Of a stretch of DNA of 64,000 bases, positions 43,601-51,682 are shown in pieces; within the stretch, counting starts at the first letter, position 1, and the number at the start of each line of letters is the position of its first letter. The notes below the pieces were generated by a model. It saw only the letters and a list, made by a program, of their open reading frames with translations, ran no database searches and was not told where the DNA came from. The position numbers and the translations under genes are program-made. The stretch covers positions 10,292,001-10,356,000 of the forward strand of contig NC_087262.1 of assembly GCF_037042905.1 (NCBI RefSeq), written 5' to 3'. Origin of the DNA: Lytechinus pictus (Eukaryota).

Positions 43601-46366
43601 CACCGTAACGAAAAATATGCTAAGCTTTGGAGCGGATTTCTTTCTTCTTTTCTCTCGATAAGAAGAAAATGCTATGCTTTGGAGCGGCTTTCTTTGATCT
43701 TTTTCTCAATAAGATAAAAATGCTATGCCTTGGAACGGAAATTTGAGTGTAAAAATGGGGGTCCCCTCCGCAGCACATACCCACAACGCATTATATACTG
43801 AGTGCACCCCCCCCCCCCCCCCCCCCGGTTTGAACCCTGAATTAATTGGGACGATCGTGACCCTCACCCTGAATTATAAACAGATATCAAGCTTATCAAG
43901 GAATACATGACATTTGAAATAAATGATTTCATATTGTCATGACTCGAGCCCAGCCATGTCATTGTCACCTTACTCTGCTGATACCCAGCTGATGTTGTTT
44001 AGCTTCCCGTACTAACAATAATCTCAAATTCTGTCTCAAAATCACTAATTTGACGGTAGAAAATTCAACAATGAGCACTCATTCAATGAACAAGGTTATG
44101 ATAGAACCTTGTTCTCTATAACTATTTCCTGTGTGGTGAAGTAAGGTTGGCAAATGTTTGGCTTATTTTCTCATGTTCTTGGGGAAAAATGTTTAGATTT
44201 TTTGACACTGTCAGTTTCCATACAACTATTCATCAAAATCAATAACTTGGCTCTTAAAGATCAAGTCCACCCCAGAAAAATGTTGATTTGAATAAGTAGA
44301 GAAAAATCAAACTAGCATAGAACAATTTTCTTGCAATTTTACTTTCCACCATGCACCAATAGAGGGTGTACACAAAATATGCCCCAAATTCAAGGTTTTG
44401 AGAGCTCTGGTGAATGAAAAAATGATTTCCAAGTTAGTCCAATGAGTAATGTCTTTAGTCCCTTTATTTTACTTTATCATGAAAAATAAATTGCAACTGT
44501 AATTTGTATTGTTACTATGGAAATTAGTATTTTGGGTGACCAAAGTCAAAAGTGATATTTTTAATGAAATTTTAAAGTGTGTGCTGTGTACTGCATTGGC
44601 ATACCATAGATCTACATGAAGATTCCCCACAGGCAGGGGCTGCAGTCAGGGTGACCAGACGTCCCATATTTCCCAGGATCATCCCGTAATTTGCTTTGTC
44701 CCGGCGTCCTGACAAACCCTTCCTGGGACGCCTATTTGTCCCGTATTTCAGAATATTGAACAAAATGTAGTTAATACATTTAAAAGTGACGAATTTTCAT
44801 AAAATAACCAACAGATGACGAAGCAGAGACAACAATCAAATCAATAACTAAACTTTAAAGTTCTGCAGTGATTTTCTTGCTAACCATATACATTGAAAAC
44901 GAACTGGCCTCCTGCCTGTGTGTGGCAGGCTACTAGCTAGGCAAGTAGGATCGCAGCAGATTCTCAATGGAGCAAACAACGACACAAAATCGGTGGGGAA
45001 CTTGTATAATTACATTATGGATTCTCAGATTACTGATTTGGAGATGTAATCGGAGGAACAAGTTATTGAGTTTTCATAGCTAGATCTAGGTGTTTCAGCT
45101 TTCGTTTTGAGTCTTGTTATGTATGATGCCACGTTTCATCTAATTTTAAGTTGACAATATTTCACTTTGAAATTTTATTCATTTCTAAAACATTTAAGTT
45201 TAAAAAAAAACACCAAATATCATTATGATTTTCGATAGATTGGATTGTTTTTGTTTGCTTGAAGTTTGAACTTTTTTCCTCTTTCTTTTCTATCCTTCTT
45301 TCATCCTTCTATCCATCCTGCTTGCCCTTTTTTGTTCGATCTATCTTTATTTCCGATCTTTCTTTCCTGATCCTTTCTCTCTCTCTGTTCATTTTTCTTT
45401 CCTTCTTTATTCAATTTCCATTTTTATTTCCTTCATTCTTTCTTTCCTTAAACTTTTCTTTATTTGCTTCCTTCTCCTTTCCTCTCCTTTTTCTTTCCGT
45501 TCTTTCTCTCCTTCCATTATTTTCTTTTTTCCATTCTCTCCTCCCTTTCTTTCTTTCTTTGTTTGTTTTATCTTTCCTTCTAATTCTTTCCCTTATTCTT
45601 TATTTCCCTTCCTACCCTCCTTCCTCCCTTCCTGTTTTTCTTCTTTCTTTGTTTCTTTCTTTCAAAGGAAACATTATTATTTCCTTCATTCTTTTCTTCT
45701 CTCTCTCCTTTATTTTGTCTTTCACACATTTATTCATCTTCCCTTCCTTTCTTTTCTTTCTATATTCAATTCAAAGAATGACGGAAACCTTTTTTCTCTC
45801 TATTAAAAGTATTATTCTTTAATTCTAACTTTCTTTCATTCTTTTATATTTGTTTCCCTTCATTTTTTCTTTCTTTATTCTCAATTTATCTCTTTTCTTT
45901 CGTCTTTTCTTTCTCTTCTTCATTCTTCGTTCACCCACCCTTCCAATTCTTTAATTATATTTTTTCACAAGTCGAATACTGTGTAGCCTTCTTTGTTGAT
46001 CTTTTTTGTCAATTTTCCCGTATTTCATTTTGTGAAATCTGGTCACCCTGGCTGCAGTGAACAAGTGTGAATGAGAGGATCGAGGAGCCAATGGGCAATG
46101 GGTATCCTCATACTGACAAAAGATATAATGCGTGGGACTACACTACAGTATATGCATACAACAAAAATGTTAATCCCACGATCTTCTATGATGAAAGGAG
46201 GGATCAATTATACTCATAAAATAACAATTTCCTATTAAAGAAGACAAATCAAACATTGAAAACTATTTTGAATACTCTTAAATGATATTTACTTTTCTGT
46301 TAGGTCTTTTGGAGCCCCACCAGCGCTCAAGAGAGTCGATAATTGTTGTTTCATGGAAGCTGCCAT
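34497..46366 (-). CDS. COPS4: COP9 signalosome complex subunit 4 (CSN4), complete, 10 exons, 405 aa
   Basis: Exons 46366-46293, 42483-42404, 41051-40900, 39829-39726, 38912-38759, 37995-37845, 37010-36840, 36516-36401, 35221-35137, 34627-34497 total 1218 nt in frame. Peptides [83 protein letters not shown] are recognisable CSN4/PCI sequence. Confidence 0.97.
35137..35221 (-). CDS. COPS4: COPS4 exon 9
   Basis: [28 protein letters not shown]. Confidence 0.95.
36097..36250. repeat. (CCAT)n microsatellite next to N-gap
   Basis: direct reading. Confidence 0.85.
36401..36516 (-). CDS. COPS4: COPS4 exon 8
   Basis: [38 protein letters not shown]. Confidence 0.95.
36840..37010 (-). CDS. COPS4: COPS4 exon 7
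   Basis: [27 protein letters not shown]. Confidence 0.95.
37845..37995 (-). CDS. COPS4: COPS4 exon 6
   Basis: [33 protein letters not shown]. Confidence 0.95.
38759..38912 (-). CDS. COPS4: COPS4 exon 5
   Basis: [29 protein letters not shown]. Confidence 0.95.
39726..39829 (-). CDS. COPS4: COPS4 exon 4
   Basis: [34 protein letters not shown]. Confidence 0.95.
40360..40886. mobile_element. Kolobok-like MITE (family of 49514-50186)
   Basis: aggacaggtccttccc..gggtggacttgacct ends; shared internal sequence. Confidence 0.7.
40900..41051 (-). CDS. COPS4: COPS4 exon 3
   Basis: [19 protein letters not shown]. Confidence 0.95.
41527..41796. mobile_element. Harbinger-like MITE
   Basis: GGGCCCTGTCTTACAAAGAGTT..AACTCTTTGTAAGATGGGCCC; relatives at 14510 and 27290-27571. 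Confidence 0.8.
42404..42483 (-). CDS. COPS4: COPS4 exon 2
   Basis: [26 protein letters not shown]; cag/gtacgt borders. Confidence 0.9.
43284..43828. mobile_element. Non-autonomous DNA element with G/C-run termini and 7-8 bp TSD
   Basis: TTTGAAC|CCTGGGGGGTACTC..GAGTGCACCCCC..CGG|TTTGAAC. Confidence 0.7.
44647..46050. mobile_element. hAT-like non-autonomous element with perfect 8-bp TSD in COPS4 intron 1
   Basis: GCTGCAGT|CAGGGTGACCAGA..TCTGGTCACCCTG|GCTGCAGT; contains about 700 bp pyrimidine-rich tract. Confidence 0.88.
46293..46366 (-). CDS. COPS4: COPS4 exon 1
   Basis: [24 protein letters not shown]; donor gtaaat. Confidence 0.9.
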
Positions 46367-46780
46367 GTTGAGCGAGACTGATCAATTTGTGAGAATGTAA
46401 TAATGTGATGATAAATTACACTTATAAAGAAAAGTTTTCTGCCAATAATAAAATACATTTTTAAAGCAAAATATTTTATTTATATCAAATTTGTGCCTAA
46501 CTTTATTCTTAGATAACACTTTTTAATATTTATTTATTATGCGAGGTTGTGTGGTAAAAACGTATGCGAAATACGAAGTGTACAATTACAATAGGCCGAA
46601 TGGAGAGAAGACCATTGATCGGCGCGTGATTTTGAACAAATGGATGGTAACGATGTCCTCGATTAAAGTAGGATTTTCTCATTAACCGTAAGATATTTTT
46701 TATCATCAGCTCATTGATATTACATGTATGGAAATGGTTAAATGTACTTTAAAGTTCCAAAGCGATTGGTCTATTATGAA
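46367..46780. promoter_or_regulatory. Probable shared bidirectional promoter of COPS4 and LIN54, with CDE/CHR element and CCAAT boxes
   Basis: GGCGCG(46621-26)-TGAT-TTTGAA(46631-36); CCAAT 46442-46; ATTGG 46765-69; candidate + strand donors at 46647 and 46688. TSS positions not visible. Confidence 0.6.
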
Positions 46781-47065
46781 TCAGTTTATTTGCAGTTTTA
46801 TTACGGCCCTGTGATATAAAATTGCTGCATCACTAAATCAATTCGCCACGTAAAAGGTGCTTGGGTGGAGAGCTTCGCTGTGATCGAAGCCGTGACCCCA
46901 CTCGATCGCGAGGACAATTTTGGCCGTGCTTGTCGGGGCAGTGAGTGTGTCTTGCCTGGTAGTTGACGGCCTCTGCATGGGTTAAACATGGCCTGGCCAG
47001 TGTATTGTTGGACACAGACTCTCCATGCTGTAGTCTACCATGGAGGACAATGCTTCATGTATGTT

Positions 47066-50395: not shown

Positions 50396-50953
50396 AAATA
50401 CTAGAAGATAATTTGGGATTACATCAGCTTACTCATTGCATATTCATGCAGAGAAATGTTTCACCGACATAATAATAGAAACTTTGTTTTTCCTGTTCTG
50501 ACTTTTATTAAATTTTCTCTTGTTCAGTTATGTTAATTTCAGCCTGGAGTACATGTACACCTTTAATTGATACCATTGTTACTTTTTAAAAATCATTTTC
50601 CACAGGTCAATCAACTGCCAATGTTGCTCAAAGTTAGTAAATTTCTAACTTCTCTGTTGTAGCTACTTTGCCTTTTCAGTTTGTTAAACTAAAGTGAGAA
50701 ATGAGAACAAGCTATCAGTCTGCTTTTAAGGGGATATTTGCATTTAATAATCTTTCAATCTTTTTTTTCCAGATTTTTCTTAAATGGCCAGTGAGCAATA
50801 CATGTATCTGATTCCTGAAAAATGTTGAAGGAAAAGGTTGCAAGTAGCTGATGGCATTATAGAGTGCTTGGAATTCCAGCTTGAGTGCTTGGCAAAAGCG
50901 TCAGCAATCTGCTGATTAAGTATACCTTGTCGACAGAGAATTGATTGGACATC

Positions 50954-51682
50954 ATGGCCGCAAATGGTGAGAAAACTGCAGGTGAGACGAATGGCAGTGA
51001 GGCCTCAGGAAACATCCTGATAAAACCTGATGGTGGTGATCACCAAGGCCAAAGTGGCAACCAGTCTGCAGGAACGGTTCGTCTTGTGAGTGGAGCCACA
51101 GGTGGAGGTGGCGGTGTCCCACTGCAAGTCCTGACCCCTCAGATGCTAGCGAGCCTCACACAGCAAGGACTCATCATCCAAAATGACGGCGATAGCAAAG
51201 GAATCCTGCAAGCCGTCAAACGGGCACTGCCGTCATCTTCTGCAGAGCAAACTGTAACAAAGGTTGTGATCACACGCAACCCTGGGCACAAAACGTCCTC
51301 AGCGAACGTGTCCGGAACGAACCCTTCGTTTAAATTGCAAGGTGATTCCAAGCTGCTGGGGAGTGGGTCGCCCATTAAGGTCATAACTGTGTCACAAGGA
51401 AGCAACATTCCAAAGGGTGTGGTCATTGCAAGCTCACCTAGTAAACAGACTATCGCTCCATCAAATAAGATAGCACTACCTCCCGTAAAAAGCCCTGGAA
51501 AGACAATCATGCTCGCGAGTTCCACAACACCGAAAAAGATTGCACCTGCATCGAACTCTGGCTCAGTGGGACAGACTATTTTAGTGAAGGGAAGCATGGG
51601 TTCGACTCCAGGAACAATCACATTGAGCTCGGGGGCTGTAGCCAAAGTCATCAATGTTATGAACACAACCGTTGCCTCATCA
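50954..51682 (+). CDS. LIN54: LIN54 first coding exon (low-complexity N-terminus)
   Basis: atcATGG context; 243 codons; TCA|gtaagt donor; upstream acceptor ttttttttccag ending 50772. Confidence 0.85.

What the first reader, a model, noticed from the sequence alone, without database searches (positions are those of the whole stretch)
46293..51682. Head-to-head COPS4-LIN54 pair that may be an ancient conserved microsynteny
Seen: COPS4 starts at 46366 (-) and LIN54 runs (+), with no gene between. From recollection, human LIN54 and COPS4 are also adjacent divergent genes at 4q21; this needs confirming. Retention in an invertebrate would imply long-term constraint, plausibly shared regulatory DNA linking cullin deneddylation (CSN) and cell-cycle transcription (DREAM/MMB).
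Basis: partly seen in the sequence, partly recalled or inferred. Interest (0 to 1): 0.7.

Follow-up and report, generated by a model that had tools for sequence, protein, structure and literature searches.

The report
Ancient COPS4–LIN54 head-to-head gene pair
Two unrelated housekeeping genes, COPS4 and LIN54, start about 200-245 bases apart on opposite strands, and this back-to-back layout, with an identical 19-base control element, recurs in sea stars, an acorn worm, a scallop, a ribbon worm, an annelid, termites and vertebrates, so it predates the split of the major animal groups.

Summary
COPS4 lies on the minus strand as 10 exons encoding an intact 405 aa protein, with ATG at 46366. LIN54 lies on the plus strand. 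RNA reads show a non-coding LIN54 exon 1 (about 46610-46687) spliced to 50773. The apparent 4.6 kb spacer is therefore LIN54 intron 1, and the two transcription starts lie only about 200-245 bp apart: a true bidirectional promoter.

The same head-to-head pair, 275-1552 bp ATG to ATG, occurs in Asterias, Pecten and Lineus. A 19-mer at window 46622-46640 reads as a CDE, a 4-nt spacer and a CHR (TTTGAA). It is letter-identical, in the same orientation, 243-282 bp upstream of the COPS4 ATG in those species, in Ptychodera, and in annelid-like and termite contigs. It lies 433 bp and 2957 bp upstream in two vertebrates.

It is absent upstream of COPS4 wherever LIN54 is not head-to-head beside it (amphioxus, scorpion, millipede, Lingula, Acanthaster). 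It stays with LIN54 in two contigs that lack COPS4.

Verdict: a genuine bilaterian-age microsynteny built on a compact bidirectional promoter. The invariant element belongs to LIN54, probably for DREAM/MuvB autoregulation. A functional CSN-DREAM coupling is not shown, and the evidence leans against it.

A withheld follow-up report overlaps this stretch.

The parts
46293..46366 (-). COPS4 exon 1 (start codon 46366-46364, 25 codons, GT donor below 46293)
   Evidence: Read directly from the sequence. An RNA contig covers 46293-46363 on the minus strand, and the stranded reads have the first mate on plus. tblastn to sea-star COPS4 residues 4-28.
34497..42483 (-). COPS4 exons 2-10: 42483-42404, 41051-40900, 39829-39726, 38912-38759, 37995-37845, 37010-36840, 36516-36401, 35221-35137, 34627-34497 (includes the stop)
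   Evidence: Spliced model with GT/AG sites gives an open 405 aa product, 80% identical to Acanthaster and Asterias COPS4. PDB CSN4 match at E=4e-29. Pfam PCI and PSMD12-CSN4_N.
46367..46609 (.). Shared bidirectional promoter. It is AT-rich (GC 0.28), has a CCAAT at 46441-46445, and shows no RNA coverage across 46394-46590.
   Evidence: Depth table of three stranded RNA runs; sequence; spacer statistics.
46622..46640 (+). Invariant 19-mer GCGCGTGATTTTGAACAAA. It comprises a CDE (GGCGCG, 46621-46626), a 4-nt spacer (46627-46630), a CHR TTTGAA (46631-46636) and CAAA.
   Evidence: Exact copies in L002, L003, L007, L009 and L010, in the same orientation relative to COPS4. Also found in termite, annelid-like and vertebrate metagenome contigs. 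Unique in the own genome at up to 1 mismatch. Chance expectation in the window is 0.01.
46610..46687 (+). LIN54 exon 1, non-coding. The 5' end lies somewhere in 46591-46610. It contains the CDE/CHR and a short upstream ORF at 46640-46666.
   Evidence: Splice joint 46687 to 50773 (GT..AG) with 13, 12 and 12 reads, all first-mate-on-minus. A 976-nt RNA contig joins 46610-46687 to 50773-51669.
46688..50772 (+). LIN54 intron 1 (4085 bp), filled with repeats. These are tandem copies at 47066-47974 and 48922-49528, and inverted repeats at 49506-50194.
   Evidence: Joint; repeat families. Very high two-strand read depth with loose ends at 49349-50333 marks dispersed repeats.
50773..51682 (+). LIN54 exon 2, holding the start codon at 50954 and 243 codons of the low-complexity N-terminal region
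   Evidence: RNA depth of 6-38x on the LIN54 strand only. Open frame. tblastx to the Asterias, Pecten and Lineus LIN54 N-termini.
56467..64000 (+). Downstream LIN54 exons: about 56467-56634, 58833-58982, 61106-61204, 62883-63119 (CXC1 end, linker, CXC2 start) and 63588-63767. The gene continues past the window to about 64547.
   Evidence: Colinear tblastx matches. PDB 5fd3 at E=3e-41. Pfam TCR.

Best explanation
COPS4 and LIN54 share an ancestral bilaterian bidirectional promoter. In this genome their transcripts start about 200-245 bp apart on opposite strands.

At the LIN54 start sits a CDE/CHR element, which is the binding site type of DREAM/MuvB. The DNA-reading subunit of that complex is LIN54 itself. 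In most phyla a Staf/ZNF143-like site lies next to it. The element belongs to LIN54 and most likely lets the MuvB complexes repress and activate their own subunit's gene.

COPS4 has stayed next door for more than 500 million years mainly because the two core promoters are packed into about 250 bp. Almost no breakpoint can separate them without damaging one of two essential genes. Escape happened only occasionally, for example by relocation of COPS4 or local inversion.

Shown here:
- gene identities and the transcript structure;
- the phyletic distribution of the pair;
- the invariance and position of the element.

Inferred:
- who binds the element;
- that compactness rather than co-regulation explains the retention.
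For: RNA evidence:
- Splice joint 46687 to 50773, opposite read strands for the two genes, and zero depth across 46394-46590.

Annotated head-to-head pairs, with the Pfam TCR gene on the opposite strand directly upstream of COPS4:
- Lineus, 300 bp.
- Pecten, 275 bp.
- Asterias, 1552 bp.
- Exon colinearity confirmed.

The 19-mer:
- Exact copies upstream of COPS4 in five fetched loci.
- Distances to the COPS4 ATG are 243-282 bp in seven invertebrate lineages, and 433 and 2957 bp in two vertebrates.
- Unique in the 812 Mb genome.
- Absent, at up to 3 mismatches, from the 10 kb upstream of COPS4 wherever LIN54 is not head-to-head beside it.
- Retained at the 5' end of LIN54 in contigs L027 and L042, which lack COPS4.

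Literature:
- CHR consensus is TTYRAA, read by two LIN54 tyrosines (PMC4974476). Both tyrosines are present in this LIN54.
- A CDE is GC-rich and lies 4 nt upstream of the CHR; CHRs sit on or near the TSS; in head-to-head pairs only one gene is regulated (PMC4176359).
- The adjacent block in the other species fits the Staf/ZNF143 site rule, CCCR at positions 3-6 and C at position 12 (PMC3082894, PMC3627581).
- Human and chicken gene lists show the two genes as neighbours.
Against: - No binding, reporter or cell-cycle expression data exist for any of these species.
- TSS positions rest on 3-5x read depth and one contig end.
- The pair was lost independently several times (amphioxus, scorpion, millipede, Lingula, Acanthaster, L027, L042), so the constraint is not absolute.
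- In the turtle the promoters are 3 kb apart, so compactness is not maintained everywhere.
- The near-constant 243-282 bp spacing across phyla could instead mean that COPS4 does use the module.
- The full 19 nt, including the spacer and flanks, are invariant. That is more than known CDE/CHR rules require, so another or an additional reader is possible.
- Taxa of the metagenome contigs are inferred only from COPS4 similarity.
- Hemichordate and turtle adjacency is inferred from the element alone, because no LIN54 coding exon lies within 10 kb.
Confidence: 0.7

Rival explanations
1. True co-regulation. The CDE/CHR plus Staf-like module is a shared control element that drives or gates both genes, tying COP9 signalosome output to cell-cycle state. 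Selection for this coupling keeps the genes together.
For: - The spacing from the element to the COPS4 ATG is held at 243-282 bp in seven invertebrate lineages, although the intervening sequence is not alignable.
- Staf/ZNF143 sites are reported as important for bidirectional transcription (PMC3082894).
- Irimia et al. found conserved 5'-5' pairs enriched for co-expression (PMC3514665).
Against: - COPS4 lacks the element in all five lineages where the head-to-head arrangement is broken.
- The element stays with LIN54.
- The turtle has two separate CpG islands 3 kb apart.
- In all head-to-head cases examined by Mueller et al., CHRs regulated only one gene (PMC4176359).
Confidence: 0.2
2. The invariant 19-mer works at the RNA level, as a 5'-UTR element of LIN54 mRNA that controls translation or stability. 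In this reading the neighbourhood with COPS4 is incidental.
For: - The element is transcribed: the RNA contig starts at 46610, upstream of it.
- In protostomes the annotated LIN54 ATG lies 11 nt downstream of it, in a conserved 19-nt mini-exon.
- Invariance extends beyond the CDE and CHR cores.
Against: - No stable or shared RNA fold: z-scores of -0.06, -1.46, -0.15, -0.35 and +0.52 in five species.
- No Rfam family.
- The sequence fits the DNA rule of a CDE, a 4-nt spacer and TTTGAA exactly.
- Conservation continues upstream into a Staf-like site.
Confidence: 0.08
3. The adjacency is chance, convergence or an assembly artefact in this genome.
For: None beyond the general scrambling of gene order. 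N gaps exist in the window, though not in the promoter.
Against: - RNA reads span the LIN54 exon 1-2 joint and cover COPS4 exon 1.
- The same arrangement, with an identical 19-mer at the same distance and orientation, occurs in independent assemblies of at least 8 lineages.
- The chance of one 19-mer match per 10 kb flank is about 1e-7.
Confidence: 0.01

Closest known systems
Conserved ancestral microsyntenic pairs (CAMPs) of Irimia et al. 2012, e.g. HSPD1-HSPE1 with its bidirectional promoter (PMC3514665)
   Same: Unrelated genes kept adjacent in protostomes and deuterostomes, in 5'-5' orientation, with a very short intergenic distance.
   Different: COPS4-LIN54 is not named in that paper's main text, and its supplementary list could not be read. 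Here the shared region carries a letter-identical promoter element across phyla, which most CAMPs are not known to have.
[quoted passage not shown]
   Same: A TTTGAA CHR on or near the TSS, a GC-rich CDE exactly 4 nt upstream, a TATA-less context and a CCAAT box further upstream.
   Different: The gene controlled would be LIN54 itself, the CHR reader. Spacer and flanks are also invariant over bilaterian time, whereas Mueller et al. found CDEs generally not conserved. No binding or cell-cycle data exist here.
Bilaterian-conserved regulatory DNA segments of Frith and Ni 2023 (PMC10735318)
   Same: [quoted passage not shown]
   Different: Those 25 segments flank developmental regulators. LIN54 and COPS4 are not mentioned. 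This element is shorter: 19 nt are invariant, and about 40-50 nt are shared by the hemichordate and protostomes.
Staf/ZNF143-dependent bidirectional promoters (PMC3082894, PMC3627581)
   Same: In Pecten, Ptychodera, Lineus, termite and vertebrate sequences the block next to the CDE fits the Staf site rule and resembles the tested site TTCCCATTATGCACCGCG.
   Different: In this window the Staf-like block is degenerate or displaced. Binding is untested in any of these species.

Membership tests
Conserved ancestral microsyntenic pair (CAMP sense of Irimia 2012) | Two non-homologous genes adjacent in both protostomes and deuterostomes | tested here: met
   Adjacent in the window (an ambulacrarian), Asterias, Pecten and Lineus. 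Termite and annelid-like contigs also show it. Human and chicken gene lists agree.
Conserved ancestral microsyntenic pair (CAMP sense of Irimia 2012) | Conserved relative orientation (5'-5') | tested here: met
   The TCR gene lies on the opposite strand upstream of COPS4 in L003, L007 and L009. The element has the same orientation in all 12 eukaryotic instances. Acanthaster is an exception.
Conserved ancestral microsyntenic pair (CAMP sense of Irimia 2012) | Correlated expression of the two genes | not testable with these tools
   Depth over one short COPS4 exon cannot be compared with LIN54.
Bidirectional promoter (TSSs under 1 kb apart, divergent) | Divergent transcription starts within 1 kb | tested here: met
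   LIN54 RNA begins within 46591-46610 and COPS4 RNA within 46366-46393. The strands are opposite and there are no reads between them.
Bidirectional promoter (TSSs under 1 kb apart, divergent) | Elements that functionally serve both directions | not testable with these tools
   Needs two-way reporter mutagenesis. Indirect evidence leans against it (PMC4176359).
CDE/CHR promoter (DREAM/MMB target) | CHR matching TTYRAA on or near the TSS | tested here: met
   TTTGAA at 46631-46636, 21-45 nt downstream of the mapped 5' end. Consensus from PMC4974476; position rule from PMC4176359.
CDE/CHR promoter (DREAM/MMB target) | GC-rich CDE 4 nt upstream of the CHR | tested here: met
   GGCGCG at 46621-46626, then TGAT, then the CHR. 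Rule from PMC4176359.
CDE/CHR promoter (DREAM/MMB target) | Occupancy by LIN54/E2F4/p130 and cell-cycle-dependent expression | not testable with these tools
   No ChIP or synchronised-cell data are reachable.
COP9 signalosome subunit 4 | PSMD12/CSN4 N-terminal repeats plus a PCI domain, full-length similarity to CSN4 | tested here: met
   Pfam PF22241 and PF01399 on exons. PDB CSN4 at E=4e-29. The 405 aa model is 74-80% identical to animal COPS4.
LIN54 (MuvB DNA-binding subunit) | Two tandem CXC (TCR) domains with the two minor-groove tyrosines | tested here: met
   78 aligned residues to 5fd3 at E=3e-41, including YCDCF and NYCEC. PF03638 on two exons.
Staf/ZNF143 binding site | 18-bp site with CCCR at positions 3-6 and C at position 12 | tested here: not met
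   Met in Pecten, Ptychodera, termite and vertebrate copies (rule from PMC3082894). No such site lies next to the CDE in this window, where only a partial block at 46641-46651 sits on the other side.

The most novel reading that the evidence does not exclude
The 19-nt CDE/CHR, with its Staf-like neighbour, is a bilaterian-wide and essentially unchanged autoregulatory switch. Through it the MuvB/DREAM complex controls the gene for its own DNA-reading subunit. Because the switch sits inside a shared promoter of about 250 bp, it would also gate COPS4. That would hard-wire COP9 signalosome supply to cell-cycle state since before the protostome-deuterostome split.
Probability: 0.15. Interest if true: 0.8.

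Novelty: new member of a known kind. Interest (0 to 1): 0.6.

Why it matters
Deeply conserved gene pairs are a known class, with nearly 600 reported. This one comes with an unusually clean handle: a 19-base promoter element identical from termites and scallops to turtles.

Only about 25 regulatory DNA segments have been reported as recognisable across bilaterians. All of those sit beside developmental genes, and LIN54 and COPS4 are not among those named.

This pair offers a simple test of two explanations for why neighbours stay together: shared regulation, or promoters packed too tightly to be cut apart. Natural experiments exist, namely the lineages where the pair broke.

It also points to self-regulation of the DREAM/MuvB cell-cycle machinery as an ancient feature.

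Tried and rejected
Literature look-ups that gave nothing:
- The supplementary pair lists of Irimia 2012, Mueller 2014 and Fischer 2016 are not held as text.
- The supplements of Robert et al. 2022 contain neither gene name.
- No paper combines COPS4 with 'bidirectional promoter'.
- No paper was found on a LIN54 promoter CHR.

Context look-ups that failed:
- The Owenia locus was withheld.
- Zootermopsis COPS4 is not on record. Termites were reached instead through host DNA in gut metagenomes.

Rejected readings:
- RNA gene or RNA structure for the element: no Rfam hit and no significant fold.
- Wider synteny: the window's COPS4 3' side shows no similarity to the saposin-like gene that follows COPS4 in both sea stars.
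- Replacement partner gene: no recognisable gene lies downstream of the element in L027 or L042.
- The millipede upstream gene gave one weak LIN54-like hit. It lacks the element and has no TCR record, so it was scored as not adjacent.
- The joint 47393 to 47872 (TC..AG) is cross-mapping between tandem repeat copies, not an intron.

- No complex prediction was run, because no protein-protein binding is claimed.
- Non-bilaterians could not be sampled. The three homologue searches returned no cnidarian, sponge or placozoan COPS4.

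
Full report
**What is in the window**

The window is low-GC animal DNA with a few N gaps, none in the region of interest.

COPS4 lies on the minus strand.
- It begins at 46366 with [25 protein letters not shown] followed by a GT donor.
- Using sea-star COPS4 as a guide and GT/AG sites, I assembled a 10-exon model running from 46366 to 34497.
- The model translates without a stop into 405 aa. It is 80% identical to Acanthaster and Asterias COPS4, 76% to Ptychodera, 74% to the vertebrate cluster, and 71-72% to Lineus and Pecten.
- One exon alone matches human CSN4 structures at E=4e-29. Pfam finds PCI and PSMD12-CSN4_N.
- All COPS4-like matches in the 812 Mb genome fall in this locus.
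- The organism is therefore an ambulacrarian, most likely an echinoderm that is not a sea star.

LIN54 lies on the plus strand.
- Further exons at about 56467-56634, 58833-58982, 61106-61204, 62883-63119 and 63588-63767 are colinear with the LIN54 genes of Lineus, Pecten and Asterias.
- A last matched exon lies just beyond the window at about 64365-64547.
- The 62883-63119 exon aligns over 78 residues to the human LIN54 DNA-binding domain (5fd3, E=3e-41). The alignment includes the YCDCF and NYCEC tyrosines that read the CHR (PMC4974476).

**The real distance between the genes**

I laid three stranded, rRNA-depleted RNA runs of the same species label, plus one run's contigs, on 46000-51900.
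- They show a GT..AG joint from 46687 to 50773 with 13, 12 and 12 reads, all on the LIN54 strand.
- A 976-nt contig joins 46610-46687 to 50773-51669.
- COPS4 exon 1 is covered on the opposite strand.
- No read falls in 46394-46590 in any run.

LIN54 therefore has a non-coding first exon at about 46610-46687. The 4085 bp up to 50772 form an intron full of tandem and inverted repeats. The two transcription starts lie roughly 200-245 bp apart.

**Is the pair ancient?**

Gene lists in published scans:
- Human chr4:82.75-83.15 Mb reads SCD5, SEC31A, LIN54, COPS4, PLAC8 (PMC11061283).
- Chicken chr4 reads ARHGAP24, COPS4, LIN54..., THAP9, SEC31A (PMC10035218).
- Both genes lie in one mouse chr5 interval.

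I then collected COPS4 proteins and looked up their genomic context with 10 kb flanks. Gene ranges in these loci begin at the ATG.

Species with a TCR-domain gene of LIN54 size directly upstream on the opposite strand:
- Lineus longissimus, 300 bp.
- Pecten maximus, 275 bp.
- Asterias rubens, 1552 bp.

Acanthaster has the TCR gene nearby but on the same strand, with another gene between.

Species with no LIN54 within 10 kb:
- Branchiostoma lanceolatum.
- Centruroides.
- Lingula.
- Chamberlinius.
- Ptychodera.
- A turtle.

**An invariant promoter element**

I compared the upstream flanks. The window's 46622-46640, read towards COPS4 as TTTGTTCAAAATCACGCGC, recurs letter for letter and in the same orientation in:
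- Asterias (L007:9721-9739);
- Ptychodera (L002:9739-9757);
- Lineus (L003:9707-9725);
- Pecten (L009:9732-9750);
- the turtle (L010:7025-7043).

Specificity checks:
- It occurs once in the window's 812 Mb genome, even allowing one mismatch.
- It is expected 0.01 times by chance in the window.
- It is absent, at up to 3 mismatches, from the COPS4 upstream flanks of amphioxus, Acanthaster, the scorpion, Lingula and the millipede.

A scan of metagenome contigs found 31 exact matches. About half are unrelated bacterial chance hits. The eukaryotic ones carry the same extended context:
- Eight termite-host contigs, with COPS4 exon 1 282 bp away and weak LIN54 exons on the other side.
- One annelid-like contig at 273 bp.
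- One vertebrate contig at 433 bp.
- Two contigs (L027, L042) in which a complete LIN54 gene starts at the element but no COPS4 follows within 3.7 kb.
- One unassigned contig (L041) carrying the same extended context.

The distance from the element to the COPS4 ATG is 255 bp in the window. It is 243-282 bp in all seven invertebrate lineages that keep the pair. The sequence in between is AT-rich and not alignable.

**What the element is**

Read in the LIN54 direction it is GGCGCG, then TGAT, then TTTGAA. That is a GC-rich CDE, the canonical 4-nt spacer and the canonical CHR, sitting 21-45 nt downstream of the mapped LIN54 5' end. This fits published rules: the CHR consensus is TTYRAA, CHRs lie on or near the TSS, and the CDE lies 4 nt upstream (PMC4974476, PMC4176359). 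Another first-stage note (s1-323387) had flagged the motif. I confirm it and show that it is invariant across phyla.

In Pecten, Ptychodera, Lineus, the termite and both vertebrates, a second block follows on the COPS4 side (see L009:9751-9772). It obeys the Staf/ZNF143 site rule, CCCR at positions 3-6 and C at position 12, and resembles the tested site of PMC3627581. ZNF143 has been linked to bidirectional transcription (PMC3082894). That block is degenerate in this window.

An RNA-level role is not supported. There is no Rfam match and no significant or shared fold in five species. The element is transcribed, however, so an RNA role cannot be excluded.

**Why the genes stay together**

The module belongs to LIN54.
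- It stays with LIN54 when COPS4 is gone.
- COPS4 lacks it wherever the head-to-head arrangement is broken.
- In the turtle it sits in its own CpG island, 3 kb from the COPS4 island.
- Mueller et al. report that CHRs between head-to-head genes regulated only one of them in every case examined (PMC4176359).

I therefore favour this reading. An ancestral compact bidirectional promoter leaves almost no neutral place for a breakpoint between two essential genes. LIN54 is probably under DREAM/MuvB autoregulation.

Escapes occurred. Amphioxus COPS4 has lost most introns, with residues 54-277 in one exon, and sits beside a sulfotransferase. That suggests relocation of a processed copy.

**Novelty**

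Conserved 5'-5' pairs are a known class of nearly 600 pairs (PMC3514665). I could not check whether this pair is on that list. Bilaterian-wide recognisable regulatory DNA is rare: 25 segments are reported, all beside developmental genes, and neither gene is named there (PMC10735318).

I rate this as a new member of a known kind, with an unusually informative conserved promoter element.

Limits of this report:
- Non-bilaterians were not sampled.
- Human strand orientation was not checked directly.
- Hemichordate and turtle adjacency is inferred from the element alone.
- No functional data are available.

Noticed in passing
window 47066-47974, 48922-49528 and 49506-50194: LIN54 intron 1 holds two copies, about 460-500 bp apart, of a composite repeat, three tandem units of about 185 bp, and 140-nt inverted arms (MITE-like). 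The 49349-50333 stretch draws very high RNA depth on both strands with many loose ends, so the reads come from dispersed copies elsewhere.
   Followed up: partly
G000, 18 places outside the window (e.g. C3:24902519-24902623, C7:30922137-30922241): The Pfam TCR/CXC domain hits many near-identical open frames of 182 aa, and some of about 1780 aa, scattered over the genome. This looks like a repeated, possibly transposon-borne, CXC-domain family rather than LIN54 paralogues.
   Followed up: no
L001:10001-11991: Branchiostoma lanceolatum COPS4 is only 2 kb long, with residues 54-277 and 276-405 each in a single exon. It lies next to a sulfotransferase. Massive intron loss together with loss of the LIN54 neighbour suggests relocation through a processed copy.
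   Followed up: partly
L003:9680-9700, L009:9705-9725; also L018, L027, L038, L042: In protostomes the annotated or apparent LIN54 start codon (ATGCC...) lies 11 nt downstream of the 19-mer, in a 19-nt coding mini-exon with a conserved GT donor. In this window the start codon is in exon 2, and exon 1 carries only a short upstream ORF (46640-46666).
   Followed up: partly
L004:1-10000 versus L007:1-10000: The two sea stars differ. Asterias keeps LIN54 head-to-head with COPS4. In Acanthaster the TCR gene ends 9.6 kb upstream on the same strand, a 317-aa gene with no Pfam hit lies between, and the 19-mer is missing from the flank. This points to a local rearrangement or an annotation difference.
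   Followed up: partly
window 46641-46651: A block that reads GTTACCATCCA towards COPS4 sits on the LIN54-exon side of the CHR. A near-identical block (TTACCATCCCA, part of the Staf-like site) lies on the opposite, COPS4 side in the other phyla. This may be a small local inversion or turnover of that site in this lineage.
   Followed up: no
L010:6500-7400 and 9500-10400: In the turtle the LIN54-type element and the COPS4 start lie in two separate CpG islands (GC 0.69-0.79 and 0.66-0.69), separated by about 2 kb of DNA with GC 0.34-0.54. PLAC8 follows COPS4, as in the human gene list.
   Followed up: partly
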